The notes: generated by a model from the letters alone, not told the origin. A stretch of 64,000 nt of DNA from IMGVR_UViG_3300009034_000001:177415-241414, one strand, 5' to 3'. Numbered from the stretch's first letter, positions 10,631 through 55,749 are shown. Translations and numbers: made by a program.

Positions 10631-10684
10631 AATATACATATGTTCCATTTTCGACCTCAAGGCGGACCAAAGAATAATTTTGTA
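10631..10684 (-). promoter_or_regulatory. Repeated early promoter, copy 1
   Basis: AT-rich UP element, GGTCC-N3-TTGAGG-N18-TATATT. Confidence 0.8.
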
Positions 10685-11213
10685 TCTTTCGGGGAGTCAA
10701 CTATGTGACCGTCTTTTTTAATTGTCTTCCAATTCTAGCAAGTTCTGTCGCACGATCAAGTCCCTCTTCAAATTCGTCATCAACGACCCACTCATCAGCA
10801 GAGTGTTCCAGTTCAGTATGTAGTACATCACTTATCAAATCCACAATGTAGTCAATTTTATGTGACTGACTAAGTTTATCCCAACCTTTTGGAAATATAG
10901 CCATTACAATTCACCTCCTCACACTATTAGGCCCAAACGAATAGTTTGGTCCGACAATCGATGAAGTACTTGGTTCTATTCTTAGACAATCAAGCCGGCA
11001 ACCCTTCTAAACTTATTTCTTATCGCATCGAAGGTTCTGTCCTTTAAACTATCCAACTTGCATAAATGTTTTACACATCTATGCTGAGTCCAACCATAAT
11101 ACATGTATTTAACATACACGCCTTCAACTAAGTTGGTTTCCCTTCGTGTCCAAGTGTTATTATCTTTTCTTTTCAATTTACCTCACCTCCTTTCTAATCA
11201 AGTTTATTACGTA

Positions 11214-11597
11214 CTACTCTTCCTGTGAATATAAAAAGTGTTCAACACCTGAGGTAATAGTTTGCGTTATCATATCCTTTGTGCCTTTAGATTCGCTATA
11301 GTGATTATGGAACGCAAGTACCAAGTTAGGCTTTCCCTCAACAAGCATTCGCCTGTTACGTATTGGCCCAGCTCCTCTTCCGTACTTCTTCCAATCTGCA
11401 TCAAACTGGAGACAAAGAATACCAAGTTCATCAGCAACTTCCTTCGCAAAGAGGTCAGCACCTCTGAACACCTTACCATTTTTATCTTTCTTTCCGCAAC
11501 CGCCTTGAATGATAACAGTTGGATTATACTCGGAAACCACTTCTTTAATAGTTTTCTTGTCAGTCCAATTTCGATCGCCACATACAAGTATTCGCAT
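11214..11597 (-). CDS. YspA/DUF2493-type SLOG-family protein
   Basis: ILVCGDRNW...IIQGG...GAD..A...ADWKKYGRGAGPIRNRRML...VLAF...SKGT. Confidence 0.85.
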   Translation of the reverse strand: MRILVCGDRNWTDKKTIKEVVSEYNPTVIIQGGCGKKDKNGKVFRGADLFAKEVADELGILCLQFDADWKKYGRGAGPIRNRRMLVEGKPNLVLAFHNHYSESKGTKDMITQTITSGVEHFLYSQEE

Positions 11598-12169
11598 TAT
11601 AACTCCCCAATTTGTATATTGGCTGGTAGAACGTAACCAGTATAATAACTTCGGGGACCGTATCTACCGCCTCCGTTGTGTGTAAACCAGCCTCCGTATG
11701 CAGTCCTACAAAACGTTATGTAAAAGCCATCTTCAAAGTACACCTTTCGGAACATATCCTTGCCTAGCAAATTTTTTGAATTCAAAATCTTTGTGACTTC
11801 GCCATGTTTCTTAGTATACCGCTCAATACAATCCTGAAGCGACCAAAGTTTAATCTTTCGTCCACCCGGAATAATATTTTCGTCAACATTAACTACTTTC
11901 ATGATTTCACGCCCCTTTCCAGACACGACGCCTATTATTAAAACGCTTTAAATGCAATTTTTGGAACCAAACATTTTTTAATAATCTTTTTAACAACTGT
12001 TTTCTTAACAATATGATTCTTGATCGACACGTATCCTTTTATTACCCACCAATCTTTATCAGTGCCCATTATCACGCCAACGCCCTTTTTTCCACTATAT
12101 GGACTTACATATTCTACTAAATCTCCCTTGTCTAATTTCAGCATCGCTAATTCCTCCGTTAAATTAATA

Positions 12170-12246
12170 TGGTGGAGCCAGCGGGATTTGAACCCACATT
12201 GCAGGCTTGAAAGGCCCGCGACCTGACCGGATTAGTCGATGGCTCC
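12170..12246 (-). tRNA. tRNA-Glu (anticodon TTC), CCA encoded
   Basis: Full cloverleaf: GGAGCCA/TGGCTCC acceptor, GACT/GGTC D-stem, CGGGC-CTTTCAA-GCCTG anticodon arm, GTGGG-TTCAAAT-CCCGC T-arm, ACCA end. Confidence 0.95.
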
Positions 12247-12688
12247 AGTTTAACAACTCGGACACATATTTCAACAAAGTATCTCAAACCTTTTCCTAAC
12301 CGGATTGTAAAATCTAATTTCGGTTATACATCTTGAACAAGTTCCAGTACTAACTTTAAAACAACTAATTTTGTTCCCAGGATAACCATCGGTGATATGA
12401 CGACTACACTGTTTGCAATATAGTGTCTGATTAAAACTACCTTTGACAAACTTTGATTCTGCCCTTTTACTAGCCATAAATGTTTTCCGGTGGTAGTGGC
12501 CGAATTTTAGATCCAGAAAACTGCCAGCCAAAAACTCTTATGATCTGACGCTGCGTTAGAAATTTAAACACGGAAAACTGTCCAATACCAATGCCAACCA
12601 AAAGGACAAGCACAAAGCCTAAATATATATACATTGTTAACCCCCCGCACAAATTAGCAAAAGACCAAGGTGAATGTTGATATCAATA

Positions 12689-13429
12689 TTACTTTGTCAA
12701 TAAGGCATTCGTTCCAACCTTGACAATTCGGCCACCCTGTTTCTTAAACTCGTTTCGGATGTAAAGTGCGAGTTGATTCCTTACTTTCCTCTTGTCAATC
12801 TTATAACTACTTAGTTGTGAAATCAACTCCTGTGTAAAATCTCGAAGCGCTTTCGTATCTCCGGGGTCCAATGAGTTTATCAACTTTGTAACTTCATCTT
12901 TCACCCAAGAACTCACGTACTCATCCTTCTTACGCATCGAACTCTTTGTACCTTTCATGCGCTTCTTTCCCTCATGATCCCTCACAATGTTGTTAAGTTT
13001 CTGAAGTACCATTTTAGTAACCTCCCGTGTAAGAAATTCCCCTTTATTACGATCCAATTCGGGGTAACCATGAATCCTCGCAAAAGCATTCGCTGATGAC
13101 TCGGTAATAGATTTCTTATTACGTTCAAATGTAATTTTATCCGCTGACCAATCAGCAAAATGACCTAATTCATGTAGAAATACTAAACCTAAATCGTTAA
13201 ATCTAACTGGACAAGGAACGCGCAAAATTATTAATCCATTACAATCAAACATCTCTCCGTACTTAACCAAGATTTGGCTAGGGCTAAATTGGCCAGAACA
13301 TCTAATTGAACGAGCATGTTTCAAATAAACAATCAACCCTTTTTTTGACAACACAACCTTCGAAGATATGTCTCTTAGAAAAAATACAATCAACTCATTT
13401 GGAAACCTGGACTCATTAATAACTTTCAT
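12689..13429 (-). CDS. HExxH metallopeptidase-like domain fused to a family D domain
   Basis: FLHELGHF motif; C-terminal 107 aa align with family D; internal GGAGGT and in-frame ATG at 13012. Confidence 0.7.
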   Translation of the reverse strand: MKVINESRFPNELIVFFLRDISSKVVLSKKGLIVYLKHARSIRCSGQFSPSQILVKYGEMFDCNGLIILRVPCPVRFNDLGLVFLHELGHFADWSADKITFERNKKSITESSANAFARIHGYPELDRNKGEFLTREVTKMVLQKLNNIVRDHEGKKRMKGTKSSMRKKDEYVSSWVKDEVTKLINSLDPGDTKALRDFTQELISQLSSYKIDKRKVRNQLALYIRNEFKKQGGRIVKVGTNALLTK

Positions 13430-15980: not shown

Positions 15981-18448
15981 ATAACCCCCTTACAGACTAA
16001 TCAGGAACATCTCTTCCTCCTAGAAAACCGTACTCATAATCGCATTTAGGACACTTCCAATAATTAAATGTATCGTTGTAATCTCCAGTGTGAATCCCGT
16101 CAACAAAATGTTTCTTTGGTATCTCTGCGCCACAATGAGGACAGAAATAAGAATGATACCAACCTTTCCAGAAAAGACGCTTTTCAGGTTCGATTAACCT
16201 ATGTCTTATGAAGTCTAATTGTTTTACTCTTTCTTTAATCAGAGTTCTGTATTCTTTTTTCAAGGCACGTATTTCTGCTCGTCGCGCGTGTTCCTCACGA
16301 ATAAGTTTATCAATAACTTCATCTTTCATGACCTTTTCTCCATAGCTTTATCGGATTTTCTTATACATCTTAAGAAAGCCAAAAAACGTTCCAAGAATGC
16401 CCTATCGTGTGCATCAAACTGCGGATTTATACCAACATATTTTACAAGACCTCTCTTGACATAATCACTAACGGTGTCAAGTTCAACCAAATCAGTCCTA
16501 ACCTCTTCAGTAAATGTGTGACAATCAAAGCTAATCTTTACCCAGTCTTTCAAAACTGCGTGTATTAACTTCTCCCTATTCACAATTTCATAGTCAAGTT
16601 TTCCAAATAAATCAACTATAGATTGAACAACACTATCAGGAACATCCCACTCAATCTTTACACGTAACATATCAACATGCCTCCTAAATTACAAACTCTT
16701 CTGGCCTTACCATAATTGATTCGCCACAAGCCTTACAGGTTGTTATATAAGCTTTATCATCAACGACCGGGAAGCTGGAGTCACAATATGGACAGTAGAA
16801 ATAGTACGTGTCATCAATATTCCTCCCATACTTCATGACCTCACGTTTGAAACCTTTTAGTACTTTCGTGTCATAAACGTCACGTCCTATTTCGTAATAA
16901 TCCATAACATCATCGCCTGCATCAAAAGTGGTTATCCAAAAAAGATCTCTAACACCTAGAGATCCACGGACCAGAATTGCAACCGTTTCGCCCGTTTCCG
17001 GATCATCAACAGATATCCACCAGCCATTCTCACCGCGCTCAAGAAATTCAACAGCCTTAGACATTTTGCCAAAAAGAAAATAATCTGGGATATCACCAAA
17101 AGGTTGTAGTGACGTTCCAATAGTTAACTCAAATTCCTTGTCCTGACTATAATGAGGTTTCAAATTCATTAACTGCCCTCCTCAACGATTTTATAATAAT
17201 ATCCAATGCAACGTCGGTAGCTTGGACTTTTGCTGTTGTTATGGCCTAAGTTCTTCTGGAAATATCTCAAGTATGTCTTCGTAAGACGCCTTGTGAAGTG
17301 GATCGTTCCAAATTTCATTCTTTATCTGATCAACAGTATCGAAAACATGGAAAAAAGCGTGACTCACGCCATAATCAGCTAAATGAACCCAGAAGACGTA
17401 ATACTTCTTTCCATCAACAATAGCATTGCCAAACATGGAATAAAGTTCTTGTCGAAAGTCAGACCCGATAGGATCCATCATTTGTCCAATACGTTTTACA
17501 TCAAATTGAATGCCCTGGACGGTAAGAGTCAGGTCTTCATCAAACTCATCCCACAGCCAATCCGTACCCCGTGGAGCACCAACGCCTGCAGCTTCAAAAA
17601 TTGCGCTCACAATCTTTTCTTTAATGTCTTCCATAATTCTGCCTCCGTTAATCAAAAATTATGTTTCTATGATTCTAAGTTTTCCATATACAAACAACTG
17701 ACCGACCAACAAATTACTTTTATGTCTAAAAATCCACATCGTTCCCTCATCAGGATAATACTTTCCGATAGGAAAGGCCAAATCAAAAACTGTAATAGTT
17801 CCATCTACTGTAATTATAAATAACCACTTCGTTCTCCAGTTGTACACCAATTCCATCTTAACGCCCTCCTTCCGAAGTATAAGTTTTAGCACAATCTGGA
17901 CAAACGCCAATTTCAACCACGATTTCCCAACCTTCGGAGTTCCGTATTCCCTTGGTCTTCGTTTCGAAACGATACTTCTTTGGCCTAGTTTTTGTCACAA
18001 CTTTATGCTGTCTTACACCTGGTCCAATACTTTTGCCGCATTTTTGACAATTATACATAGATATCTACCTCATACAATTTTGTGTAATGGACTGTTAAAA
18101 ATGTTTTTTTAATAATGGAGTATCTTTATCTACCTAATCATCCACACCATGTAGACTCTAACCACTCGTCTAAGAGAGTGCCAGTTTTCACACCACATAA
18201 TACTTTTCTGATCCATTCTTCGTTTGCGGAACAAGCAGTTATGAAATCCCAATCTGTTTGTTGGTTCTTCCATAAGAAGAACCATGGACTTATTCCACTG
18301 TTTGGATGGTCATAATTTACCATGACAAACTCGTATCCAGAAGCAGAAGACATTTGGTAGATTTCAATTGTTGTCTCTTTGTCCAAACTTACTACAACTT
18401 TTCTCATCTTTGCTCCTTCACGCTAAATTTATTTAATTATTTTTTAAT

Positions 18449-18500
18449 AATATAAACATGTTCGGTCATAGACCTCAAGGCAGACCAAAAAATATTTTTA
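18449..18500 (-). promoter_or_regulatory. Repeated early promoter, copy 2
   Basis: AT-rich UP element, GGTCT-N3-TTGAGG-N18-TATATT. Confidence 0.8.
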
Positions 18501-19249
18501 AAACGAGGTCAACATTAATGAGACTTATTTCTACTTATAGCTACAATCCCAATATAACTCCGAATAGTCAATTTCATCATCACCAAAGTCTTTGAAGAAA
18601 GTACAATTGTAAAAGCCCGGCGTATCAACCGCATAGTAGCTACCTTTATACTGTATACCTCTAAGATGTTGACATAAGTAAGACCTACAACCCCAATTCA
18701 CAACGCAACCGTCTTCAGAGTTGTCGGGCCAAAAGCAACCATTGGGACCTGAGGCTTCAGCTGAAAACTTTTCATCCGGTATGTACATTTTCTTTCCTCC
18801 TTCTCATTTTCTCAACAATCCAATTAGGACAAAGGTATGATATCTTACGGGAGTAGGCGCAGCTCTTGCCAGCAGTAAAGCCACATTTGAAATTAGGTTT
18901 CAGAAACTCACAAGGCTTCCGATCTATTCTAATTTGTCCTTTCTTTATCCTTTTCATAATAATACGCTGACGTCACTACCAACAGTTTGTTCTTTAAAAT
19001 ATTTTTTGCCTGTCTTACTTTTTCAATCGTATCAGGATCATCCAAATCCCACCTCTCCAAAATGGTATTCAGCTCTGCATCGGGCAAATGATACTGTCCT
19101 CGTACTAAACCATGTTTATCCAATATTTCATAGACCGGTTCAACCCCAAGCCAGTCGACACAATTAGCTAGCCACTTGCCCAATTTGTGCTTCTGAGTCT
19201 TTGAGACCTCTGACTGATAACCTTTCATGACTTACCTCCTTGTGTTTGG

Positions 19250-20375: not shown

Positions 20376-21110
20376 CTAACAATTACTTGGAATCAAATCC
20401 GGAAACTCCAGCTCCAAGAACGCTTTAACTCTAATCTTTAATCTAAGTTCCAGTTGCCTTATCCTTTCCCTTGAAAGTCCAAATTTATCTCCAATTGCTT
20501 GCAGTGTTTTTGGCTTTTCAGACATTAAACGATTTTCTAAGATATACCGGTCTCTACTTTTCAATGTTCTACGAAATGTAGCAAACTGTTTATTGAAAAA
20601 CTTTCTCTCATCGCGTTCAACAATCTTCAGGTCAGTAGACTTTTCTTCATCTATTACAAGGCCGATTTGAGCTTGCCGATCCGAAACCTCGAGCGAGTCA
20701 AGAGATACATCCCACTTTACATCTTCATTAATATCCGGCTTGGAAGGCCTAACTATACTCCGATTGTTTGCAATGAACCTCAACATCTTAGACTTAATCC
20801 AGAAGGAAGCGTAGTAAGAAAATTTCACTCCTCTAAATGGGTCAAACTTCTCCACAGCACGAATTAAACCCAAATTACCTTCTTGAATCAAATCTAAAAC
20901 GTTGATGCCAAACCTGTTATAGTATCCCAAAGCAATTTTTACCACTAGCCTCAAATTTGAAATCACTAATTTGTCCCTTGCACTAAGGTCATTACTTTTT
21001 GCATACCTCTTTGCAAGTTCCAGAACCTTTTCTGACGGTAATACTGGATTATGTTTTATCTCTGATAAATACAGCTGAAATGTCCTATTATGTATAGTTT
21101 CTGTAAACAT
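20376..21110 (-). CDS. RNA polymerase sigma-70-family factor, RpoH-like
   Basis: Region 1.2 YLSEI; region 2 SNLRLVVKIA...DLIQEGNLGLIRAVEKFDPFRGVKFSYYASFWI; region 4 TLQAIGDKFGLSRERIRQLE. Confidence 0.92.
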   Translation of the reverse strand: MFTETIHNRTFQLYLSEIKHNPVLPSEKVLELAKRYAKSNDLSARDKLVISNLRLVVKIALGYYNRFGINVLDLIQEGNLGLIRAVEKFDPFRGVKFSYYASFWIKSKMLRFIANNRSIVRPSKPDINEDVKWDVSLDSLEVSDRQAQIGLVIDEEKSTDLKIVERDERKFFNKQFATFRRTLKSRDRYILENRLMSEKPKTLQAIGDKFGLSRERIRQLELRLKIRVKAFLELEFPDLIPSNC

Positions 21111-22433
21111 TACTTATTAGCCATACCGGAGAGTTCCGGAAAAGACGTTCTATAATCTATGCGCATAGCTTGATGTAAAAACCGCTCCAATAACCGAATA
21201 GCAGCCTTTGGATTTTCTTGAATAAGCAAACTAAGTCGGTGTGTTATTTCCCAACAGTTGTTGCAAAGTCTAGTAGCGTGCAGAGCTTTTGGAGAGCCGC
21301 ATTCCTTACAGTAAAACGCCATCCCCCTTGGTATTGTTATTGGTGCCATACACTAACCCCCATTATAAAAGTTAACGGCATTACTTTCTTCGCCGCTCTG
21401 ATAGAACACAAGGGCTTGTCTTCTTGGTCTAAACATTTCAACTCTCACCAAAAGCTCAGGTCTGTCTTTACTTGCCCTATAAGCCTCATCAAGACACTGA
21501 TGCAAACTGGTATAATAGTGCCCTTGGCCTATCTCTACATATTCCCATCGCCACTCCACCATTACTTTTCCTCCTCTATCCTTCAAAAATTGTTTCAAAC
21601 ACTTCCTCCCACGGAGTCATAATATCGATAGACTTTGGTGGCCAACCTTCATTTGAATATACATTCAACGTTACGGACTCTCGACCACAATGTAAGCCGA
21701 AAGTAACATCACCATAACGCTCTTTTAGCGCTCTCTTAAGTTCTTCAAGTTTTTCTCGAAGGAACCAATCCCACTTGTTCAAATTTGGTTTATCTCTCCA
21801 ACTCATTCTTTCCTCCTTCATTACATTCCTCTTCCTTGTGTCTCTTAAGTATCCTTCTGGATAAAACAAATATGCCTAAACTCACCACAATAGCTATATA
21901 ACATATATATGTTACCAAGTTACCTAAAAATGCAAATTCCGTATGTTGAGTCATATCTCAGTACCTCCTAAACAATATCCTCATCAAAGTATTCAAAGTT
22001 TTCAGGATCGGAGCCGTACAATGTTCTCTTTAACTTCGCCTTAGCACTACAACCTTTTTCATCACAACTAACATTGTACATAATCTCAAGATATACACGA
22101 TTGACTTTGACCCAAGCCCTTGCGGATATAAGACCATTTGTAGTCCAGCAATGATTACACTGTTTTTTCATGAGACTCTCCCTTTACTGGATTTCTTCAA
22201 TTCCTGGAAACTTATTCAACATACCCAAATTATAAGTCACAGGCTCCGATTTAATAAGAACATGCATCTTGTAGAGGCCGTGTGGAACATCTTCAAATAT
22301 AAATTCTAACAGCCCAATCAGAACAAGGCCATTCTTCAACCTAACACTTATGGTTTTATCTGTTGTAAATCTCTTTAACATAAAAAGCCTCCTCGTTCCG
22401 AATGAGTAAATGAAAATTTATTTTTAATAATAT

Positions 22434-22487
22434 AATATACATATGTACCTTAACGAACTTCAAGGGGGTCCTTAAAATTTTTTTGTG
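22434..22487 (-). promoter_or_regulatory. Repeated early promoter, copy 3
   Basis: AT-rich UP element, GGACC-N3-TTGAAG-N18-TATATT. Confidence 0.8.
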
Positions 22488-22497
22488 CCTGTTCCTT

Positions 22498-22863
22498 CTA
22501 TTTACCTAAACAGACTTTTCTAGCTAATGCCTTTAAAGCACCCTTATTCTTATATAACTTCTTTTCCCAATCGGCCAACGTCACACCTTTATAAACAGCG
22601 GAAGTACATAAGCTACCAGTAAGCGATTTAAACCGAGACTCTGGATAAATATTCCAAAGAGGGCACCAAAAACACTTACTAGGCTTCCATTCGACCATGC
22701 AAGTGAATAACGTATTTGAGTCCTTACAGAGTTTACAAGCCTCTCCAAAGGGATGGCTAAAAAACATTCCATTGTATGTAATATTTTTCAGTACAAGCTC
22801 GTAAACACGTTGCTTTGTCCATCTTTTTGACTTTTTGATATCCAAATTTACCACCCCCTCCAA
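22498..22863 (-). CDS. Family A paralog 2
   Basis: CKLC...CFWCPLW...C..AVYKG...NKGALKALARKVCLG. Confidence 0.85.
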   Translation of the reverse strand: MEGVVNLDIKKSKRWTKQRVYELVLKNITYNGMFFSHPFGEACKLCKDSNTLFTCMVEWKPSKCFWCPLWNIYPESRFKSLTGSLCTSAVYKGVTLADWEKKLYKNKGALKALARKVCLGK

Positions 22864-23067
22864 GGAGACTTCCGTTCAAAATAAGCTATTTCAGCCTCCG
22901 TTGCTATAAGATGCCAAGTATATGGCATCAATCTTTCTATTTCACCCCAAGGGGAATCAATTTCATAAGCCTTATCTTCTGGCATACCGCATTTTTGAAT
23001 TAGCCAGTTGGTAGCCCATTCACCAAACCACTCCGGACTGTCACTCCAAACGCTCATAATACACCTC

Positions 23068-23385
23068 CTATCCTAGACAAACCTTTCTTGCTAACGCCCT
23101 TAATGCTCCACGATTTCCTTTAAGTCGATTCGTTATTTCACCTAGCCGTCTACCTTTATGTACATACAAACAACAAGCACTTTCAGAATCAGTATGAGGC
23201 AAATCAACAATATCCCTAAGTCGACAGTAGCCACAAAACTTCATAAACCTAAACGATTGAAAATCAGCTCGTTGTTTCGCGTCTATACAGAGCGGGCAGT
23301 CATTGGGAGCACTAAAGAATATACCGTACTTTTCAATATTGTTCAAAACAATCTTTAAGATATCCTCACGCGTATAACTACTCAT
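23068..23385 (-). CDS. Family A paralog 3
   Basis: NIEKYG...CPLC...CGYC...C..VHKG...GNRGALRALARKVCLG. Confidence 0.85.
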   Translation of the reverse strand: MSSYTREDILKIVLNNIEKYGIFFSAPNDCPLCIDAKQRADFQSFRFMKFCGYCRLRDIVDLPHTDSESACCLYVHKGRRLGEITNRLKGNRGALRALARKVCLG

Positions 23386-23640
23386 AATAAGCCCCCATTT
23401 TTAAGATTGTCGTAATACTCTTTCATACAACCCTTGTCACTTGGACACAACCCCCAAGTATCAGCCCATTTTCCATACGACTCATAAGCAGGCAGTGTAA
23501 ATGACTCTTTCCAGAATCTTCCACATAGACCACACCAATAGTGGTCGTACTTAACAGAAGGACAACCTGTAAGGAGCCAAGATAACCTATCAAATATCCT
23601 CCTTAACATCTGACACCTCCATTTCACAATAATTTTCTAA

Positions 23641-24011
23641 CTATCTTGGAATAAAGATTTCATTACATACAAATACACGCAATTTTCGTTGCCAGCCCTT
23701 TGCAATCACCTTTCGTATCTTTACTTTCTTTATTACGGGACTTCGCGGATACGGGAAATGGGAGTAGCCCAACTACGTGCGTCGCGTAAAGTATAAAAAC
23801 AATGCCAGCCATTTTTATACTCCTTTCCGAGCCAATCATGTAAAAATTGTTTGGGTTGTCCCACTGAAAAATCCTTAGCACGCAACCACTTACCTAAAGG
23901 TCGTGTCTTGCAACCGTAGAATTCGCCATACAAGCCATTAGCCGAGTCCACAAAGACTTTATAACCATACTTTGGTCGATACAAAGACGTGTCAAGTTGT
24001 CGAAGACACAT
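23641..24011 (-). pseudogene. Family B paralog 4, frameshifted near 23765
   Basis: Frame 1 ends at IREVP*; the family C-terminus (KKVKIRKVIAKGWQ...VFVCNEIFIPR*) continues in the -1 frame. Confidence 0.75.
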
Positions 24012-24022
24012 TTAACCACCCC

Positions 24023-24331
24023 CTAACCTAAAAAGACCTTCCTTGCTAATGCTCTAAGTGCTCCCTTTTTTCCTCTTAATTGTGAAGAGATATTGCGTAA
24101 TGACTTGTTTTTATGTTGTATCAAACAACAATCGGCATTCTCCGGCATTGGATACAGATCCCACAGCGGACAATAGTAACAGGCCCCCGACGGATAATTT
24201 AAAACTTCACCTCGACGTGAGTCTGCTTCATGACAAGCTTCGCATGTAGAAGAATCACCATATATGTCTCCAAAATTCTCGATGTTCTTTAAAGCAAGTT
24301 GAAAAACTCTTTTCTTTGTCCACTTTTTCAC
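24023..24331 (-). CDS. Family A paralog 4
   Basis: WTKKRV...CEAC...CYYCPLW...GALRALARKVFLG. Confidence 0.85.
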   Translation of the reverse strand: MKKWTKKRVFQLALKNIENFGDIYGDSSTCEACHEADSRRGEVLNYPSGACYYCPLWDLYPMPENADCCLIQHKNKSLRNISSQLRGKKGALRALARKVFLG

Positions 24332-25011: not shown

Positions 25012-25061
25012 TTTAATTTTGTTACAGTTACATTGTTATGTTTCCAAACACGTTTCCATAA

Positions 25062-35719: not shown

Positions 35720-35723
35720 TTAT

Positions 35724-41759: not shown

Positions 41760-42287
41760 ATCGGCATCCCCCTATCATATCTTGTATTGCGCACTACTGT
41801 GTCCTTATCAACAGTATATCTCACTTTACACAATGTGCATTTAAAAGCCAAATCACCACAAGCATATGAAGCACAACCTCTAGAATGTAATACTAAATTT
41901 GTGCCACAATCAGGACAAATTCCATGTTCTACGCATTCCTTTCTAAACTTTCTACGCTTTAGTATAACAACTGGATCATTCATCATCCTTACCTCCACTA
42001 TATTTTAACGTCTATATCTAAATATTCTAGAAGCAAACGAGCACACGCAACCACAGCTGCCCAACATCTTCTTGCGTCTACAAGTGAATCGAATTTATAC
42101 TCTTCATCCTCCGGATGAAGAAATTTGTGACGCAGACATGTGCCACTTTCATCCCATTCTTCCTCAACGATAGATATGCGTACTTTATATCTCCACATTT
42201 TTCCTCCAATCCATTTGTGATTTTCTTTACTGTGGTAGGTTCATAATAATTGTAGGTTAATTTTTTTTAGTTAAATTGATTTTATAT

Positions 42288-42341
42288 AATATACCAATTT
42301 TTAGGTTTAACTTCAAGGGGGACCCTAAAATATTTTTGTAC
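42288..42341 (-). promoter_or_regulatory. Repeated early promoter, copy 4
   Basis: GTACAAAAATATTTTAG-GGTCC-N3-TTGAAG-N17-TATATT. Confidence 0.85.
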
Positions 42342-42484: not shown

Positions 42485-42805
42485 TTACCGGGGGTCACCC
42501 GATACCGAAACTTTCATCCAAACTTCGCCGTTGAAGAGGTCAGAAACAAAATGTCTACCATTGCATTTATTATCAAGATAACATTCAGTAGTCTTCCCGT
42601 CAGAACCCGAAGCCAGAAAGATGTCACTACACATGGTAAATTCTTCCTTGAAGACTTTGTTGCCTCTCCCCCCAGGAACAATATAACGTCTAACCGCAAA
42701 ATCCTTTTTTAGCTTGTGCCTCTCATCATAGAGAACTCTAATCCAACGATTGAATTTAAAATGTTCTCTTTCGTACCTTTCCTTTAATGTAGATTGATCA
42801 CACAT
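42485..42805 (-). CDS. Family C paralog 1
   Basis: MCD..TLKERY...W.RV..DERHKLK...VRRY...F....DIFL...KTTECY...FVSDLFNGEVW. Confidence 0.88.
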   Translation of the reverse strand: MCDQSTLKERYEREHFKFNRWIRVLYDERHKLKKDFAVRRYIVPGGRGNKVFKEEFTMCSDIFLASGSDGKTTECYLDNKCNGRHFVSDLFNGEVWMKVSVSGDPR

Positions 42806-42849
42806 CTTTTGTGTCCTCCTTCTAAATAAGTTTAATCAAACCAAATTAT

Positions 42850-43176
42850 TTAACAATCTGCATCCTCACAAATCCAAACTTCGCCATTAAAGAGAAGACT
42901 AACAAAACCGGTCCGACATGTCATAACGGCATCATGATACAAATAATGCTCGGTTGTCTTCCCGGCGCTCTCAGTCAGAAAAATATCCGAATCCATCCAA
43001 AATTGGTACAAACTGACTTTGTCATTCCCCACGGGAGGGATAACATAACGCCTAACAAACACGCCAGTTTTTAGTTTGTGCCTCTCATCGTAAGGGACTC
43101 TAATCCAACGAGGAACGCATTTATCTTTAATCTGTTCCCTTTCATACCTTTCCTTTAATGTAGATTGATCGCACAT
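42850..43176 (-). CDS. Family C paralog 2
   Basis: Family motifs. Confidence 0.88.
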   Translation of the reverse strand: MCDQSTLKERYEREQIKDKCVPRWIRVPYDERHKLKTGVFVRRYVIPPVGNDKVSLYQFWMDSDIFLTESAGKTTEHYLYHDAVMTCRTGFVSLLFNGEVWICEDADC

Positions 43177-43206
43177 CTTTTGTATCCTCCCTCTAAATAA
43201 GTTTAA

Positions 43207-43548
43207 TCAAACCTGAGACCAAATACGCATCCAAACTTCGCCACGGAAGAGGTCTCCAACATAACCCCTTTTTCCAATCGATGCTTGTCCAGGCAAAATT
43301 TCATCATGGTACATATAAGCAGTTGTTGTCCTCCCGTTGTAACCCTTTGTAAGAAAAATGTCAGAATCCATCCAAAAGTCATGTACTTCAACATGGTCAC
43401 TCCCAGTAGGGACAAAATAGCGCCTAACCCTAGTACCCGATTTTAGCTTGTGTCGCTCATCAAAGGGAACCAGAACCCAACTAGGAACGCATTTATCTTT
43501 ATTCTGTTCCCTTTCATGTCTTTCCTTTAATGAAAGTTTAATACACAT
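43207..43548 (-). CDS. Family C paralog 3
   Basis: Family motifs. Confidence 0.88.
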   Translation of the reverse strand: MCIKLSLKERHEREQNKDKCVPSWVLVPFDERHKLKSGTRVRRYFVPTGSDHVEVHDFWMDSDIFLTKGYNGRTTTAYMYHDEILPGQASIGKRGYVGDLFRGEVWMRIWSQV

Positions 43549-43592
43549 CGTTTATACCTCCTTTCGGTGGTTAATAAAACCAAGTTATTTAT

Positions 43593-43997
43593 TCAGCAAC
43601 CCGTGAGCACCAAAATCCAAACTTCATCCATAAACAGATCCTGAACAAAACCACTCCGTCCCCCTATATTTTTCGAGTCCTTAACAAAACCCTTCCGTTC
43701 CCCCATCTTACTCGAGGGTACTGGCCCAGGCGGAGGATGATACAAATAACACTCCGTAGTCTTCCCGTTGTAACCCTCCGTCAGAAAAATGTCCGAATCA
43801 AGCCAAAATTCTTGCATGGAGACTTTGCCACTATTTCCCACCTTAACGTAGCGCCTAACAAACATACCAGCTTTTAGCTGGTGTCTCCGTTCAAAGGGAA
43901 CCATAATCCAACGAGGAACGCACGTTTTCTGTTGCTTTTCATATCTTTCCTTTAATGTAACTTTAAAAAAATCAGTAGCTGCTGGAAAATCGAACAT
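43593..43997 (-). CDS. Family C paralog 4 (with Pro/Gly-rich insertion)
   Basis: Family motifs plus HPPPGPVPSSKMGERKG insert. Confidence 0.88.
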   Translation of the reverse strand: MFDFPAATDFFKVTLKERYEKQQKTCVPRWIMVPFERRHQLKAGMFVRRYVKVGNSGKVSMQEFWLDSDIFLTEGYNGKTTECYLYHPPPGPVPSSKMGERKGFVKDSKNIGGRSGFVQDLFMDEVWILVLTGC

Positions 43998-44711
43998 TAC
44001 TTATTCCCCCCTTTCATTACTTTAAAAAAGACTGGATATGGCTCTTCTAATATGATAAAGAAAACCTTTATCATTTGGTAGTGTATAAAGCATAAGCCCA
44101 TTTGCAATCTTGCGAACAAAGTACTCTTCGCCTTTATAGTGAAAACAATAACACGTGTTGAGTGCCATATCATCGGTGTTGACTTCTACTACGCCCTGTC
44201 GTATTCCAATCGGCCATTGCGTTTCCATCTATATCCGCCCCCTATTTAATATGATTTATTACACATTCTACTGTCATAACAGCAGCAAATGCCGTTATGA
44301 CTGAAATAACCACATAATAAAGTATACCCATTAGTTTCTTCATTTCAAACTCCGTTGTTTATTCTGATTTACTCAAAAGGGAATACATCTGCCAACAGTG
44401 AACTTACATTCACCACTAAAGACTCTTCCGAGTCAGAACCCTTGTTATATCCCAGCCAGTCACCGCCCCTATCGCTATCCATCCACCACTGACCATCACC
44501 AAGTTCGTTCTCGACTTGTTTTTTCCAACTTTTTAACAATTCTCTTAATTTCTTTTCCATCTTTACCCTCTCTTCATCTTTTTTGGCTTTATCCAAAACA
44601 TCTTTTTGCTTATCATATAATTCCTTGCAACGCTTCTTAAAAGACCTTTTGCCATCTTCCCTCAAAAGGTCTATCAAAGTGATTTCTCCCATGATTTCAT
44701 CTCCTTCTATC

Positions 44712-44945
44712 TTACGTTACAATAAGTCCAAATACGACCGCAATGCTCGCTCCGAACCATGTGCACCACAAATCGTCCCACTCAGGCGTTCCATAACCTA
44801 ACATATCTAACAATTCCTTTGCCACGCCAAATGCGAATCCGGCAAAATAAAGTGGCGACCATGCCATTCCTAACAAAGATAGCATACAACCCACTATAAG
44901 ATGCGCTATTTTATCTCTTCTCAATGTAATATCCCAATGACCCAT
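44712..44945 (-). CDS. Small membrane protein (VanZ/DUF2279-like DK..H...KE..D motif)
   Basis: DKIAH...hydrophobic helices...KELLD..G.G...DL. Confidence 0.5.
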   Translation of the reverse strand: MGHWDITLRRDKIAHLIVGCMLSLLGMAWSPLYFAGFAFGVAKELLDMLGYGTPEWDDLWCTWFGASIAVVFGLIVT

Positions 44946-45028
44946 ATAAAATCCCCCATATTTTTTTTGCCCGTCCCAAATTAAATAATACAGTTAAAGA
45001 TATGTCGTTTACCTCCTTTTCGTACTCC

Positions 45029-45174
45029 GAGGGAATCAAACCCTCATCCGCTATTGTCATACTAGGGCTCACGGCTACTAGAAACATCATGAGTCATTAC
45101 ACGACACAGCACAATGTTACCGTGAGCCCGGCACCCCCTCGATCTCCGCCTTTCCGCAGATGCCGCAAGGCGGA
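45029..45174 (-). ncRNA. Candidate structured RNA element
   Basis: GC-rich intergenic stretch with three stems: TCCGCCTT/AAGGCGGA, GGGCTCACGG/CCGTGAGCCC and GAGGG-TTTGATT-CCCTC. Confidence 0.35.
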
Positions 45175-45244
45175 AGCCTACTCAAACACAGATATAGCTG
45201 ACACGGCCAGTCCAAATTCAAACACCTCCATATAAACCGCACTG

Positions 45245-45562
45245 CTACTCGTACACGTACATCATCCATACTTCGCAGTTAAAGAGGTCACTAACATAAT
45301 ACTTGGTGACATCACCTTTTCGGTTATAACATTCTTCAGTTACCGAGTTATAGTTTGGAGCCAAATAGATGTCAGTACCCATAGTAAATTCTTTCATATA
45401 GACACAAGTACTTCCTGCTGTAAGGATAAAAGCTCTGACTACCTTATCCTTCTTCAATACATGTCTTTGGTCATAAGGCACATGACACCAACGGTCATAG
45501 TGTGGTACCTGCTCTCTGAGCCATCGATCTCTTAAACATGGTTTATCATCCATTTCTTTCAC
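45245..45562 (-). CDS. Family C paralog 5
   Basis: Family motifs (FTMGTDIYL, YVSDLFNCEVW). Confidence 0.88.
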   Translation of the reverse strand: MKEMDDKPCLRDRWLREQVPHYDRWCHVPYDQRHVLKKDKVVRAFILTAGSTCVYMKEFTMGTDIYLAPNYNSVTEECYNRKGDVTKYYVSDLFNCEVWMMYVYE

Positions 45563-45586
45563 CTCTTTTAAATATACTCCGTACTG

Positions 45587-45892
45587 TTACGCGTACATCC
45601 GCCATACCTCTCCGTTAAAAAGGTCACTAACAAAATATTCGATATCACAACCTCTTTTCTTATAACATTCCGTAGTTAACTTGGAAAAGCCTCCTGACGA
45701 TAAATAGATGTCAGTACCCATAGTAAATTCTTCCATGTGAACACAATCTCTTCCAAATGGAACGGCATAACATCTAATCCTAATGCCCTTCTTTAATAAA
45801 TGTCTCTGGTCGTGACGCACTTGAGTCCAATAACAATCGACAGGTGACTGTTCCTTCATGTATCTATCTCTTAAAGTAGGTTCGCCGCACAA
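45587..45892 (-). CDS. Family C paralog 6
   Basis: Family motifs. Confidence 0.88.
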   Translation of the reverse strand: MCGEPTLRDRYMKEQSPVDCYWTQVRHDQRHLLKKGIRIRCYAVPFGRDCVHMEEFTMGTDIYLSSGGFSKLTTECYKKRGCDIEYFVSDLFNGEVWRMYA

Positions 45893-45916
45893 TTTCTTTC
45901 ACCTCCTTTATTCTCA

Positions 45917-46222
45917 CTAAATATCTTTACTTTTTATCCACACCTCTCCGTTAAACAGATCACTAACAAAGCGTACGTCACTGTAGCCGTATTCCCTATA
46001 GTATTGAATGGTTTTTAAGTTAGTGCCCTTTCCCAAATAGATATCTGTGGCCATAGTGAATTCTTCCACGATGACTTCTTGAGTTCCAATTGGTATAATG
46101 TAACGCCTTACCCTAGTGCCACTCTTTAATAAATGTCTTTTGTTATAGGGTACACATTTCCAGTTGTCATTATCGTATGTCTCCCTGAGATGCCGATCCC
46201 TTAAACAAGGTTTGTCACACAT
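45917..46222 (-). CDS. Family C paralog 7
   Basis: Family motifs. Confidence 0.88.
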   Translation of the reverse strand: MCDKPCLRDRHLRETYDNDNWKCVPYNKRHLLKSGTRVRRYIIPIGTQEVIVEEFTMATDIYLGKGTNLKTIQYYREYGYSDVRFVSDLFNGEVWIKSKDI

Positions 46223-53500: not shown

Positions 53501-53588
53501 TGTTACACCTCCCCATCGTTTTCCTTTTTGGAATGTAGGGAGCTCTTTAAAGAGCCCCCTACTCAGTCAGGTCACCCCGGTGAGGGTT

Positions 53589-53930
53589 TTACTTCGTCAA
53601 GTAAGCACGGTTACCCACGCGGATTATCTGGCCGCCGTCGATCTTCTTGTACTCATTCCGGATGTACAGCACGATTTGGTTTGTGAACTTCTTCAGGTCA
53701 CCTACCTCGGCTGTGTCCAATGTTGCTACCACCTCATCGGCAAAGTCTCTCAGCTGCACGGCATCGCCATCTTCCATCCGATTCCACAGAGCCTTTACTT
53801 CGGCCCTGACCTTTGTGGAAGTACAATTCTCGAAGTTTCTCTTGGAACCGTTTTTGGATTCGCGGGCCTCAACCTGCTCTTCGTGATCCTTGACAACCTC
53901 GTCCAATTTTTTGAATCCGTTCTCTGCCAT
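53589..53930 (-). CDS. Family D protein (possible winged helix)
   Basis: FKKLDEVV..HE...ST.VR.EVK...GD.VQLRDF...LYIRNE...GG.I.RVGNRAYLT. Confidence 0.8.
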   Translation of the reverse strand: MAENGFKKLDEVVKDHEEQVEARESKNGSKRNFENCTSTKVRAEVKALWNRMEDGDAVQLRDFADEVVATLDTAEVGDLKKFTNQIVLYIRNEYKKIDGGQIIRVGNRAYLTK

Positions 53931-54234
53931 CTTGTATCACCTCCTTTATACTCAGTACCCTGAGTTTATTTATTAACCGAAACTTCATATTATGCCTTAT
54001 CCTTATCCTTATCCTCATCCGTTGCCAAAAGGTCTTCCTCAGCCTTTACAGCCAAGTTCAAATACTTTTCAGCCTTCTTATCATCTCCCTCCGCCTCGGA
54101 CTTGAGAGCCACTGCAAAGGCAAGTTTCACTTTTAACGGAAGATCCCTAACGCCAATTTCCTCTTTAATTGCCAAAATTTCCAATGCCATCTTTAATCAC
54201 CCCCCACAAGTTAATGTTTTATTTTTATATAATA

Positions 54235-54289
54235 AATATAATTATCACCACGGCCGAACCTCAAGCGGGACCAAAATATATTTTTGTAC
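54235..54289 (-). promoter_or_regulatory. Repeated early promoter, copy 5
   Basis: GTACAAAAATATATTTT-GGTCC-N3-TTGAGG-N18-TATATT. Confidence 0.85.
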
Positions 54290-55695
54290 GTAGGTATAAT
54301 AAATGTCCTTTATAATTTCATACAACCAACCTCGATTTCTTGCACAAGATTCAATAACTCATTACCTCACTATTTTAATTTGAACCTTTTGGGCCCGAGT
54401 AACCTAACACCAAGGTTTAAAACCCATCTGGCAAATAAACTTAATAGTAGGACAACCGTTGTGCCAAATTAGTTTTCCGGATGGATAAATGCCAAGCCCA
54501 GCTTCAGCAGAGAACAGTACATACTTATCAACATCTGGACAATAACCAACGATACAATAGTTTTCCTTATGTCCAGAAGCTATTTCACAATCGAAGTCAA
54601 CGCCAATTGAAATAGCTAATACATTGCCAGTTCTATCCTCAGCCCGGAATATCTCAGGTTTGGACCTTGGGAACTGCTTAGTCAAGTCTTCAGCCAATCG
54701 TCCTATTGCTTGTTCTGCACTCTTTAACGACACTATTCTCACCTCCTCTTAACCGTACTTCCATACATTGGCTAACTCATTAAGTTGTTTAGCCAGAACC
54801 TGCATAGCATCCCAAACAATCCTTGGTTCGTGAGTATTGTGTTTCTGAAACCACACAACCCAATCCGTCAGCTGTTCGGCAACCAGGACACCCTTGTCCT
54901 CACGTAAAGAATCGCTTAACTTTGGATGCTTCATTAGTTTAGAGAACTTGTTTATGCCGGGTATCATAACTACACCTCCTCTTCATCATTTTCTTCTCCC
55001 GGAGTTAATACACCTTCATGTTCCAATTGAGCTTTCAGGTTTGACAATGATTCATCAAGTTCCTGTAAAACTACTGACTTACCCTTTTTAATCATATCAT
55101 CAATATCGGGTAACTTAATCTCTTCTGACATGATGTGCACCTCCTTGCTTATCTGTCTTTATCTTATGGCACTTGTAACACCTAATCCAATCCGGGTGTT
55201 CTTCTTCATGACGTTTCTTCAAGAACCCGCCACAATCAATACACGTCTTTGTTTTACTCAGTTCATTATATGGGTAGCTCTTCTTTGGCATACTTTCTCA
55301 CCTCCTTTTTTCGTTAACCTCCCATACATGTAATCTCTGACCACCAAGGCCTGTATAAGCCGAAAGTATCACTATTGTTTTCAAGCCGATACATTTCGGT
55401 CTGCCAACATATATAACCCAACCAGCTCTCTTTGCCCTTGAATCTCCCTCCCCATAGTATTTATCCACATGGTAAGTTGCATTTCCAATTTTAGTCAACA
55501 ACCCAACTTCTTTCCAACTGTCTCTCAACTGACGAGCAAGTTTTAGATTCCGTGTGGTGAGCGTGTATAACTCATTACACACAGCAATTAAAAAATGTAC
55601 ATCCTGTTGAAAATTCTCTCTTCCTGTCCTCATAGCTTTAAACCTCCTTTTTTATATCCCCCTCAATTAATTTTTTTAGTTAAATTGTTTAATAT

Positions 55696-55749
55696 AATAT
55701 ACTACTTTTTAAAATTAACCTCAAGAGGGACCTAAAAATATTTTTGTAC
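55696..55749 (-). promoter_or_regulatory. Repeated early promoter, copy 6
   Basis: GTACAAAAATATTTTTA-GGTCC-N3-TTGAGG-N17-TATATT. Confidence 0.85.

What the first reader, a model, noticed from the sequence alone, without database searches (positions are those of the whole stretch)
10631..55749. Six copies of an early promoter with a fixed GGWCC box 3 nt upstream of the -35 element
Seen: at about 10660, 18478, 22463, 42316, 54264 and 55724 the minus strand reads (GTAC)AAAAA-T-rich-GG(T/A)CC-N3-TTGA(G/A)G-N17/18-TATATT. Five copies have GGWCC and one has GGTCT. The spacers diverge while the box position is invariant. Established: TTGA and TATAAT-like hexamers plus a UP element make a strong sigma70 promoter. 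Inference: the extra box is a site for a phage regulator (analogous to the T4 MotA box) or a methyl-sensitive switch.
Basis: partly seen in the sequence, partly recalled or inferred. Interest (0 to 1): 0.6.

Follow-up and report, generated by a model that had tools for sequence, protein, structure and literature searches.

The report
Phage early promoters with extra GC box
An uncultured 241-kb sediment phage carries six near-identical early promoter modules in which a conserved GGWCC box replaces the usual A-rich site next to the -35 element; the box is clearly under selection, but what reads it is not known.

Summary
Six minus-strand modules (TTGA starts at window 10660, 18478, 22463, 42316, 54264 and 55724) share this layout: (GT)AC, an A/T tract, GGWCC, S-N-C, TTGARGT, 16-17 further spacer bases, then TATATTAT. 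A profile search of the whole 241,415-bp genome finds only these six, plus one degenerate seventh copy about 1.2 kb outside the window that lacks the box.

All five box columns are at least 5/6 identical, against 5 of 82 spacer and flank columns (P about 1e-6). The box is therefore selected, not merely inherited.

The A/T tract matches the distal UP-element subsite. The box with its linker forms an 8-bp G+C island at about -43 to -36, where the proximal alpha-CTD subsite normally lies.

No phage RNA polymerase was detected. The only phage sigma gene lies downstream of one of these promoters. A host-RNAP early promoter is the best reading.

What the box does is unresolved:
- regulator docking site, about 0.4
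- holoenzyme or extended -35 contact, about 0.3
- structural role, about 0.12
- methyl switch, about 0.03

The T4 MotA analogy fails on position and on missing homologues. No relatives and no RNA data exist, so no transcription start site or cross-phage conservation test was possible.

The parts
10629..10685 (-). Promoter module P10660. A/T tract 10669-10685, box GGTCC 10664-10668, linker GCC 10661-10663, -35 TTGAGG 10655-10660, 18-nt spacer, -10 TATATT 10631-10636. Predicted +1 near 10624. The first downstream gene is 10133-10555 (140 aa, basic).
18447..18503 (-). Promoter module P18478. A/T tract 18487-18503, variant box GGTCT 18482-18486, linker GCC, -35 TTGAGG 18473-18478, 18-nt spacer, -10 TATATT 18449-18454. 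Predicted +1 near 18442. The first downstream gene is 18138-18407.
22432..22488 (-). Promoter module P22463. A/T tract 22472-22488, box GGACC 22467-22471, linker CCC, -35 TTGAAG 22458-22463, 18-nt spacer, -10 TATATT 22434-22439. Predicted +1 near 22427. It heads the run of small genes that ends with the phage sigma factor gene.
42286..42341 (-). Promoter module P42316. GTAC plus A/T tract 42325-42341, box GGTCC 42320-42324, linker CCC, -35 TTGAAG 42311-42316, 17-nt spacer with TG before the -10, -10 TATATT 42288-42293. Predicted +1 near 42281. It heads the second array of the 20-copy Cys-rich gene family.
54233..54289 (-). Promoter module P54264. GTAC plus A/T tract 54273-54289, box GGTCC 54268-54272, linker CGC, -35 TTGAGG 54259-54264, 18-nt spacer, -10 TATATT 54235-54240. 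Predicted +1 near 54228.
55694..55749 (-). Promoter module P55724. GTAC plus A/T tract 55733-55749, box GGTCC 55728-55732, linker CTC, -35 TTGAGG 55719-55724, 17-nt spacer, -10 TATATT 55696-55701. Predicted +1 near 55689. This is the copy furthest upstream in the direction of transcription.
20376..21110 (-). Phage sigma-70-family factor, 244 aa, with regions 2 and 4 and no detected region 3. It lies about 1.3 kb downstream of P22463 in the same gene run. It is the only sigma gene found in the genome.

Best explanation
The six elements, plus a box-less seventh copy just outside the window, are one family of early promoters read by the host RNA polymerase (RNAP) with its primary sigma factor. 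This part is inferred from sequence anatomy and context.

Each module is built from these parts:
- An A-then-T tract that fits the distal UP-element subsite, the docking site for one alpha C-terminal domain (alpha-CTD), centred near -52.
- An 8-bp G+C island, GGWCC-S-N-C, at about -43 to -36.
- A -35 element, CTTGARGT.
- A 17/18-nt spacer.
- An extended -10, TATATTAT.

The G+C island occupies the position where activator-independent strong promoters carry the A-rich proximal alpha-CTD subsite. It is conserved as tightly as the -35 hexamer, while the spacer and flanks have drifted almost to random. It is therefore a selected recognition element; this much is shown.

My most likely reading of its role is inference only. 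I take it to be the docking site of a small trans-acting protein, either phage-encoded or injected. That protein would sit in the one helical turn between alpha-CTD on the distal subsite and sigma region 4 on the -35. One factor could then switch the whole early regulon together, either as a class-II-like co-activator or as the early shut-off repressor.
For: **Anatomy and uniqueness**
- establish the layout and show that the composite occurs only at these sites.

**Selection on the box**
- Box identity is 0.87, against 0.41 for the spacer and 0.27 for the far-upstream flank.
- All 5 box columns are at least 5/6 identical, against 5 of 82 neutral columns (P about 8e-7).

**Promoter context**
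- All copies are intergenic and lie 61-118 nt from a start codon with a strong ribosome-binding site.
- They are confined to the first-transcribed block of small genes.
- No phage RNAP was detected with PF00940 or PF00562.
- The phage sigma gene itself sits downstream of P22463, so at least that copy must first fire with a host sigma.

**Position of the box**
- The proximal and distal alpha-CTD subsites are centred near -43 and -53 (PMC3326320).
- The box is 77% G+C and the linker 94% G+C, next to a 15% G+C tract. That makes it a poor alpha-CTD site, because alpha-CTD prefers the narrow minor groove of A-tracts.

**Precedent**
- At the phage Mu middle promoter Pm, a Mor dimer binds 5-bp inverted repeats centred at -43.5, and alpha binds immediately upstream of it (PMC4390567).

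**The seventh copy**
- It keeps the UP tract, the CCC linker, the -35 and the -10, but lacks the box. This is what one would expect of a promoter that escapes box-mediated control.
Against: - No TSS or RNA data exist. Only two sediment DNA runs hold this phage.
- No relative carries the promoter, so cross-phage conservation cannot be tested.
- No candidate DNA-binding protein was identified among the 20 early proteins scanned. The ribbon-helix-helix (RHH_1) search gave nothing significant in the window.
- A 5-bp word that occurs about 200 times in the genome is too short to be a specific operator by itself.
- The flanking invariant bases (C before TTGA, GT after TTGAn) could equally reflect direct RNAP contacts.
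- The host is unknown, so its sigma preferences are unknown.
Confidence: 0.4

Rival explanations
1. The box is an extended -35 element read by the holoenzyme itself. GGWCC-S-N-C-TTGAR would be one long -35-region element. It would be contacted directly by sigma region 4, by the alpha-CTD/sigma-4 junction, or by RNAP modified by an injected phage protein. The sigma could be the host primary sigma, a host RpoH-like sigma or the phage sigma. No separate DNA-binding regulator would be needed.
For: - E. coli sigma32 promoters have a conserved -35 region that reaches equally far upstream: TNtCNCcCTTGAA (PMC12077118).
- The dnaK P1 scaffold reads TCTCCCCCTTGAAG (PMC10216364). P42316 reads GGTCCCCCTTGAAG, which is 12 of 14 identical.
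- The delta-proteobacterial sigma32 consensus is CTTGAAA, with CTTGAAg and gTTGAgg variants (PMC545781).
- The phage sigma's best family hits are RpoH and RpoS models. Its nearest homologues (about 40% identity) are Desulfobacterota sigmas annotated as sigma-32.
- Its region 4.2 keeps the RERIRQ motif that reads TTGA-type -35 elements.
- The invariant C before TTGA and GT after TTGAn (7 of 7 copies) look like direct polymerase contacts.
Against: - The sigma32-type -10, CCCCATnT, is absent. The -10 is TATATT(AT) in all copies.
- Region 2 of the phage sigma scores higher against RpoS and SigA chains than against E. coli RpoH (119 and 99 bits against 84), and I saw no RpoH-box motif after region 2.4 in the translation (by eye). 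It is not a clear RpoH.
- Sigma-4 footprints reach roughly -38 (own knowledge). GGWCC at -43 to -39 lies beyond that, in alpha-CTD territory, and alpha-CTD prefers A-tracts.
- The two leading Gs of the box do not match the sigma32 consensus.
- No bacterial genome in the 185,579-species set shows this architecture beyond 12 scattered chance hits.
Confidence: 0.3
2. The box is a structural element only. The G+C island would act as a rigid or wide-groove junction between the bent A/T tract and the -35. It would set the phase of upstream DNA wrapping, or keep alpha-CTD off the proximal position. No protein would read its bases.
For: - There is a sharp composition step: 15% G+C in the tract, 77-94% in the island and 38% in the -35.
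- The linker varies in sequence but stays S-rich: GCC, GCC, CCC, CCC, CGC, CTC.
- The seventh copy keeps only the CCC linker.
Against: A purely structural role does not explain base-specific conservation. G-G-W-C-C is kept in 5 of 6 copies. The only variation is T/A at the centre, which preserves the palindrome, and one C-to-T change at the end.
Confidence: 0.12
3. The box is a methyl-sensitive switch. GGWCC would be the target of a host or phage methyltransferase of AvaII/SinI-type specificity, and its methylation state would gate early transcription.
For: GGWCC is a palindrome and a known restriction-modification specificity (own knowledge). The centre varies only between T and A.
Against: - GGWCC is neither avoided nor enriched: 198 observed against 221 expected.
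- No C5 (PF00145) or N4/N6 (PF01555) methyltransferase is present in the phage.
- One active-looking copy reads GGTCT, and the seventh copy has no site at all.
Confidence: 0.03
4. The box is an inherited passenger. The modules are copies spread by duplication or recombination, like the repeated promoter cassettes of T4-type hyperplastic regions. On this view the box is conserved only because the copies are young or are homogenised by gene conversion.
For: - The modules lie among tandem paralogue arrays.
- Pairs of copies share spacer or leader similarity, for example P42316/P55724 at 0.57 and P10660/P22463 at 0.52.
Against: - Spacer, leader and flanks have diverged to 0.27-0.41 identity while the box stays at 0.87. 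Gene conversion would homogenise the spacers as well.
- Homology stops sharply at the module edges.
Confidence: 0.07

Closest known systems
UP-element-containing sigma70 promoters (rrnB P1 type; Estrem/Ross/Gourse consensus)
   Same: Both have -35 and -10 hexamers with 17/18-nt spacing. Both have an A-tract-then-T-tract upstream. AAAAATATTTT fits the distal subsite pattern AAAWWTWTTTT (consensus letters recalled from Estrem et al. 1998). The subsite centres near -43 and -53 come from PMC3326320.
   Different: The proximal subsite (A-rich, about -46 to -38) is replaced by a conserved G+C island, GGWCC-S-N-C. The -35 is TTGARG followed by T, not TTGACA.
Phage Mu middle promoter Pm with activator Mor (class-II-like)
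   Same: A protein site built on 5-bp repeats is centred at about -43.5, and alpha-CTD binds A/T-rich DNA immediately upstream of it (PMC4390567). That is the same geometry as A/T tract, then box, then sigma-4 region.
   Different: Pm lacks a functional -35, and the Mor site is a 16-bp element with two inverted repeats. Here the -35 is intact, only a single 5-bp palindrome is conserved, and no Mor-like protein has been identified.
Sigma32 (RpoH) heat-shock promoters
   Same: The -35 is CTTGAA with a conserved C-rich extension reaching 8 nt upstream: TNtCNCcCTTGAA. dnaK P1 reads TCTCCCCCTTGAAG and P42316 reads GGTCCCCCTTGAAG.
   Different: The -10 CCCCATnT is absent, and TATATT takes its place. 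The two leading Gs of the box differ from the consensus. The phage sigma is not a clear RpoH.
T4 middle promoters (MotA box with AsiA sigma appropriation)
   Same: Both are phage-specific extra promoter words that mark a temporal class.
   Different: The MotA box is centred at -30 and replaces the -35 (own knowledge). Here the box lies at about -41 beside an intact -35. No MotA (PF09158) or AsiA (PF09010) homologue is present.
Repeated early promoter families of large lytic phages (T4 early promoters and PeSL cassettes, T5 early promoters)
   Same: Both involve many near-identical strong early promoters with conservation outside the two hexamers (upstream A/T block, A/T-rich initial transcribed region). 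Both are scattered through a region of small, fast-evolving ORFs (own knowledge of Wilkens & Rueger, Gentz & Bujard and Arbiol et al.).
   Different: As far as I know, none of those families has a G+C box at the proximal UP position. No conserved stem-loop accompanies these modules, and terminator-like hairpins are not enriched.

Membership tests
Sigma70-type (-35/-10) bacterial promoter | -35 hexamer resembling TTGACA | tested here: met
   TTGAGG in four copies and TTGAAG in two, which is 4/6 of consensus. TTGA is invariant.
Sigma70-type (-35/-10) bacterial promoter | -10 hexamer resembling TATAAT, with a 17+/-1 nt spacer | tested here: met
   TATATT in all six copies (5/6 of consensus). The spacer is 18 nt in four copies and 17 nt in two.
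Sigma70-type (-35/-10) bacterial promoter | Transcription starts 6-8 nt downstream of the -10 | not testable with these tools
   Only two sediment DNA runs hold the phage and no RNA run does.
UP element | Distal subsite: an A-tract followed by a T-tract, centred near -53 | tested here: met
   AAAAATATTTT is exact in 3 of 6 copies and is also present, shortened by one T (AAAAATATTT), in the seventh copy. The other copies differ by 1-3 changes. The tract is 15% G+C.
UP element | Proximal subsite: an A-rich tract centred near -43 | tested here: not met
   GGWCC-S-N-C occupies about -43 to -36. The box is 77% G+C and the linker 94%.
UP element | Stimulation that depends on alpha-CTD | not testable with these tools
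   This needs in vitro transcription with alpha-CTD-deleted RNAP.
T4 MotA-dependent middle promoter | A MotA box centred at -30 that replaces the -35 | tested here: not met
   The box lies 3 nt upstream of an intact TTGA -35 element.
T4 MotA-dependent middle promoter | MotA and AsiA proteins encoded by the phage | tested here: not met
   PF09158 gave no match. PF09010 gave only a 13-bit sub-threshold hit.
Sigma32 (RpoH)-type promoter | -35 CTTGAA with a C-rich upstream extension | tested here: inconclusive
   CTTGAR is present in 6 of 6 copies. The extension agrees with the consensus at the T, the C and the C-rich positions, but not at the two leading Gs.
Sigma32 (RpoH)-type promoter | -10 CCCCATnT at 11-16 nt | tested here: not met
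   No C-run is present. Three copies have only aCAT at that position, and the conserved -10 is TATATT.
Methylation-gated promoter | A cognate methyltransferase, and a site distribution that shows selection | tested here: not met
   No PF00145 or PF01555 gene is present. GGWCC occurs 198 times against 221 expected. A host methyltransferase cannot be tested because the host is unknown.
T4-type promoter-early stem-loop (PeSL) cassette | An early promoter repeated among small ORFs, together with a conserved adjacent stem-loop | tested here: inconclusive
   Repetition among small-ORF arrays is met. No conserved stem-loop is shared by the copies, and terminator-like hairpins are not enriched: 5 against 11.3 expected in one region, 14 against 12.3 in the other.

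The most novel reading that the evidence does not exclude
The GGWCC-S-N-C island would be the recognition site of a previously unknown small phage protein, or of a phage-modified polymerase surface. It would insert in the single helical turn between alpha-CTD on a consensus distal UP subsite and sigma region 4. One factor would then switch on or shut off the entire 57-kb early regulon of an orphan jumbo phage. That would be a compact new form of class-II-like promoter control with no homologue among known phage regulators.
Probability: 0.3. Interest if true: 0.55.

Novelty: new variant of a known kind. Interest (0 to 1): 0.4.

Why it matters
Large lytic phages take over the host through one class of very strong early promoters. 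Conserved positions outside the two hexamers usually reveal how the phage biases or later silences host RNA polymerase.

Here a base-specific G+C box replaces the proximal UP subsite, in a phage with no detectable relatives among about 15 billion proteins. If a factor reads the box, it is a handle on an unknown takeover or shut-off mechanism. It would also be a compact, portable control element for synthetic promoters.

If the polymerase itself reads the box, it extends the known reach of -35-region recognition.

In practical terms, the seven modules give a clean operon map for the early third of this genome. The result is otherwise modest: a well-defined motif whose promoter nature is conventional.

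Tried and rejected
**1. Comparative test of box conservation: impossible, because no relatives were found.**
- Near-DNA search of GenBank phages: no match.
- The large terminase subunit (TerL) is at most 27% identical, and the DNA polymerase at most 28% identical, to any GenBank phage.
- IMG/VR searches with the sigma factor and with TerL found only a 100%-identical 173-kb fragment, which lacks the promoter region.
- A second contig from the same sample is 99.99% identical.
- The 20-paralogue family hits only this phage. That holds in the word-index search of 5.8 billion proteins and in the full HMMER search of 1.84 billion representatives.

**2. Pattern scans for box plus promoter: chance hits only.**
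- IMG/VR: 2 hits.
- JGI metagenomes: 20 hits, none with the A/T tract.
- 185,579 species genomes: 12 scattered hits. The architecture is therefore not a recognisable host promoter type.

**3. TSS evidence: none available.**
- Only two low-depth sediment DNA runs hold the phage and no RNA run does.
- Short 80-90% matches from other contigs over the A/T-rich leader (55637-55720) are not from this genome and stop before the box. I treat them as low-complexity chance matches.

**4. Second promoter class for the phage sigma.**
- Dyad and k-mer enrichment found no convincing motif with a CTTGA-type -35.
- There is only weak enrichment of AGTAATT and GTATAAA upstream of non-early genes.

**5. Candidate regulators: none found.**
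- Pfam and NCBIfam scans covered 20 early proteins, including the first gene after every promoter. No HTH or RHH domain appeared.
- The RHH_1 search gave only a 12.5-bit hit outside the window.

**6. Other searches.**
- No dyad symmetry spans the box and the -35.
- A possible 11-bp-spaced direct repeat (GGTCy ... rGTYn) is perfect in one copy but absent in two. I did not adopt it.
- Generic sigma70-like hits (60 against 50.9 expected; 53 against 48.8) and terminator-like hits are not enriched.

**7. Fold of the Cys-rich family.** The model is good (pLDDT 84) but has no PDB match.

No complex prediction was attempted.

Full report
**Setting**

The window is the last 64 kb (177415-241414) of a 241,415-bp linear IMG/VR virus record, estimated 98% complete. 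The G+C content is 38-42% and the GC skew is uniformly negative. About 90% of ORFs lie on the minus strand, so transcription runs from the right end leftwards.

In that direction the genome shows, in order:
- a block of roughly 57-65 kb of small ORFs, which is the window
- tRNAs and replication genes (DNA polymerase, a LonB-like protease)
- the large terminase and large structural-size genes

Ribosome-binding sites are strong and of the GGAGG type. The phage was found only in sediment metagenomes.

**Check of the observation**

GGWCC-N3-TTGA occurs five times on the minus strand, against 0.76 expected. A sixth copy reads GGTCT.

A relaxed scan of the whole genome for TTGA-N16-19-TATAWT gives 20 hits. 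The six sites stand out among them because they share 75-80 nt of similarity.

An nhmmer profile of the six copies recovers only those six (E 1e-15 to 1e-18). It also finds one weak seventh copy at genome 176244, about 1.2 kb left of the window. The seventh copy keeps AAAAATATTT, CCC, TTGACG, a 17-nt spacer and TATTAT, but has TATAC where the box should be.

The consensus is (GT)AC-AAAAATATTTT-(0-2 nt)-GGWCC-S-N-C-TTGARGT-N16/17-TATATTAT, followed by an A/T-rich leader.

Homology ends sharply about 25 nt upstream of TTGA and about 20 nt downstream of the -10. Pairwise identity by segment is as follows:

| Segment | Identity |
|---|---|
| Far upstream | 0.27 |
| A/T tract | 0.75 |
| Box | 0.87 |
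| Linker | 0.62 |
| -35 hexamer | 0.91 |
| Spacer | 0.41 |
| -10 hexamer | 1.0 |
| Leader | 0.40 |

Five of 82 spacer, flank and leader columns are at least 5/6 identical, against five of five box columns (P about 8e-7). The combination of an A/T tract with the box occurs nowhere else except for one unrelated coding site.

**Are they promoters, and for which polymerase?**

- Each module sits in a real intergenic gap, 35-169 nt after the preceding stop codon.
- Each has its -35 element 61-118 nt before a start codon with a good ribosome-binding site.
- Searches for single-subunit and multisubunit RNAP domains found nothing in the genome.
- One sigma-70-family gene was found, at window 20376-21110, with regions 2 and 4.
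- That gene lies about 1.3 kb downstream of P22463 in the same gene run. At least this copy must therefore be fired first by a host sigma.

The hexamers match 9/12 of the sigma70 consensus with 17/18-nt spacing. Such matches are not enriched as a class (60 found against 51 expected). The argument for function therefore rests on the shared extended module and its context, not on hexamer score.

No RNA data exist for this phage. The two DNA runs hold only low-depth, near-identical contigs. The start site remains a prediction.

**Anatomy relative to known polymerase contacts**

Assume the start lies 7 nt after the -10. The -35 hexamer then spans about -35 to -30, or -36 to -31 in the 18-nt-spacer copies. 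The linker spans -38 to -36, the box -43 to -39, and the A/T tract about -60 to -44.

The alpha-CTD subsites of UP elements are centred near -43 (proximal) and -53 (distal), and alpha-CTD prefers the narrow minor groove of A- and T-tracts (PMC3326320). An A-tract followed by a T-tract is the signature of optimised distal subsites. AAAAATATTTT fits the distal pattern AAAWWTWTTTT as I recall it from Estrem et al. 1998.

The box and linker (77% and 94% G+C) therefore sit exactly where the proximal alpha-CTD subsite would be, and they are the opposite of what alpha-CTD prefers. This is the unusual feature of the family.

**What reads the box?**

*(a) A trans-acting protein.* The free space between the distal tract and the -35 is one helical turn. 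A close precedent is phage Mu Pm. There a Mor dimer binds 5-bp inverted repeats centred at -43.5, and alpha binds the A/T-rich DNA just upstream (PMC4390567). The box-less seventh promoter fits a copy that escapes such control.

Several points count against this reading. No DNA-binding domain was found in the 20 early proteins I could scan. No RHH domain was found in the window. The pentamer alone is too common (198 copies) to be a specific operator.

*(b) The holoenzyme itself.* E. coli sigma32 promoters carry a -35 region conserved just as far upstream, TNtCNCcCTTGAA (PMC12077118). dnaK P1 (TCTCCCCCTTGAAG; PMC10216364) is 12/14 identical to P42316 (GGTCCCCCTTGAAG).

The phage sigma scores best against RpoH and RpoS family models. 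Its nearest homologues (about 40% identity) are Desulfobacterota sigmas annotated as sigma-32. Its region 4.2 keeps RERIRQ. Its region 2.4 has S and L where, from memory, sigma70 has Q437 and T440.

Against this reading, the sigma32-type -10 (CCCCATnT) is absent, and the phage sigma resembles RpoS and SigA more than RpoH in region 2. The two leading Gs of the box do not match. The box also lies beyond the usual sigma-4 footprint (own knowledge).

*(c) A purely structural G+C junction.* This explains the S-rich linker but not the base-specific GGWCC.

*(d) A methylation switch.* This has no support. The word is not depleted and no C5 or N4/N6 methyltransferase is present.

*(e) Passive inheritance.* The saturated spacers contradict it.

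I rank (a) at about 0.4, (b) at 0.3, (c) at 0.12, (e) at 0.07 and (d) at 0.03.

A MotA box sits at -30 and replaces the -35 (own knowledge). Here the -35 is intact and the box lies at -41. MotA and AsiA domains are absent. The element works, at most, 'like' a class-II or Mor-type site, and not like a MotA box.

**Search for relatives**

The phage is an orphan. All of the following returned nothing but the same phage or chance hits:
- GenBank phages
- IMG/VR
- JGI metagenomes
- one genome for each of 185,579 species
- the 5.8-billion-protein word index
- a full HMMER pass over 1.84 billion representatives

Conservation across phages, which would be the best in silico test, is therefore not available today.

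**Verdict**

This is a real, statistically solid family of early promoter modules. Its core is conventional: host RNAP, a distal UP subsite, a -35 and a -10. Its one unconventional feature is a conserved G+C box in place of the proximal UP subsite.

I class it as a new variant of a known kind. Its function is open, and simple in vitro experiments on synthetic DNA could settle it.

Noticed in passing
genome 176190-176275 (window about -1225 to -1140; outside the window): A seventh, degenerate copy of the promoter module. It reads AAAAATATTT, then TATAC in place of the box, then CCC-TTGACG-N17-TATTAT, followed by a perfect leader hairpin (ATGACATAAAA/TTTTATGTCAT). It marks the left boundary of the early block.
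   Followed up: yes
window 22498-41759 (20 genes, e.g. 35068-35382): A 20-member paralogue family of proteins of about 105 aa. They have five invariant Cys residues (CxxC...CxxC...C) and a conserved C-terminal helix, GNKPALRALLNGL. Every hit among 5.8 billion proteins (word search) and 1.84 billion representatives (HMMER) is encoded by this phage itself. The AF2 model has pLDDT 84 and no PDB fold match.
   Followed up: yes
window 42485-46222, and 5064-31494: Two further paralogue families were found. One has 7 members of about 105 aa, directly upstream of P42316. The other has 6 members of strongly basic proteins of about 92-147 aa, one of which (10133-10555) is the first gene after P10660.
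   Followed up: no
window 20376-21110 (-): The phage sigma factor has no relative in any phage collection searched. Its nearest homologues (about 40% identity) are sigma-32-annotated sigmas of Desulfobacterota (Desulfatiglandaceae, Desulfobacteraceae, Thermodesulforhabdus). Together with the sediment source, this is a weak hint about the host.
   Followed up: partly
window 9660-10133 (-): The second gene of the P10660 operon matches the DMP19-like family (PF14300, 32.9 bits, above cut-off). DMP19 is a DNA-mimic protein known to bind a transcription factor in Neisseria (own knowledge). It is a possible host-takeover protein.
   Followed up: no
window 54386, 55856 and 57624 (minus strand; regions 54290-54403, 55750-55875, 57534-57650): There are three copies of a second intergenic repeat with the core AAAAGGTTCAAA(C/T)T..AA..AGG(A/T)A. 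Two of them lie about 100-130 nt upstream of promoters P54264 and P55724. Over about 115 nt the mean column identity is 68%. The function is unknown; it could be a small leader ORF, an RNA element or a protein site.
   Followed up: partly
window 12170-12246 (-); also genome about 169661 and about 124790: tRNA-Glu(TTC) lies in the early region (ARAGORN and Rfam). tRNA T-arm motifs (GGTTCAAATCC) suggest further tRNA genes left of the window.
   Followed up: partly
genome 1-176000 (upstream regions of non-early genes): The words AGTAATT (8 found against 1.2 expected) and GTATAAA (7 against 1.7) are enriched upstream of genes outside the early block. They may be the -10-like core of middle or late promoters used by the phage sigma.
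   Followed up: partly
window 58945-59111 and 58727-58806: This is an A/T-rich intergenic stretch with repeated CTATAT/TATAG words. An isolated TATATTATAAT with no recognisable -35 lies at 58751-58758. These could be another control region or an origin, in the 8 kb upstream of the first box promoter.
   Followed up: no
window 55900-64000 (locus L037:1-8100): The right-most 8 kb carries no box promoter. It encodes a BRCT/HHH_2 protein (ligase-like fragment), an isochorismatase-family protein and a RyR-domain protein (precomputed Pfam annotation). What drives these genes is unclear. The contig ends show no repeats.
   Followed up: no
genome 127914-130343 (L009:7914-10343, -) and 61565-63904 / 72418-74373: A LonB/LonC-like AAA+ protease (809 aa) is present. 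Two paralogous large proteins (779 and 651 aa) match only the unknown-function family phrog_27227 and match nothing in GenBank phages by tblastn.
   Followed up: no
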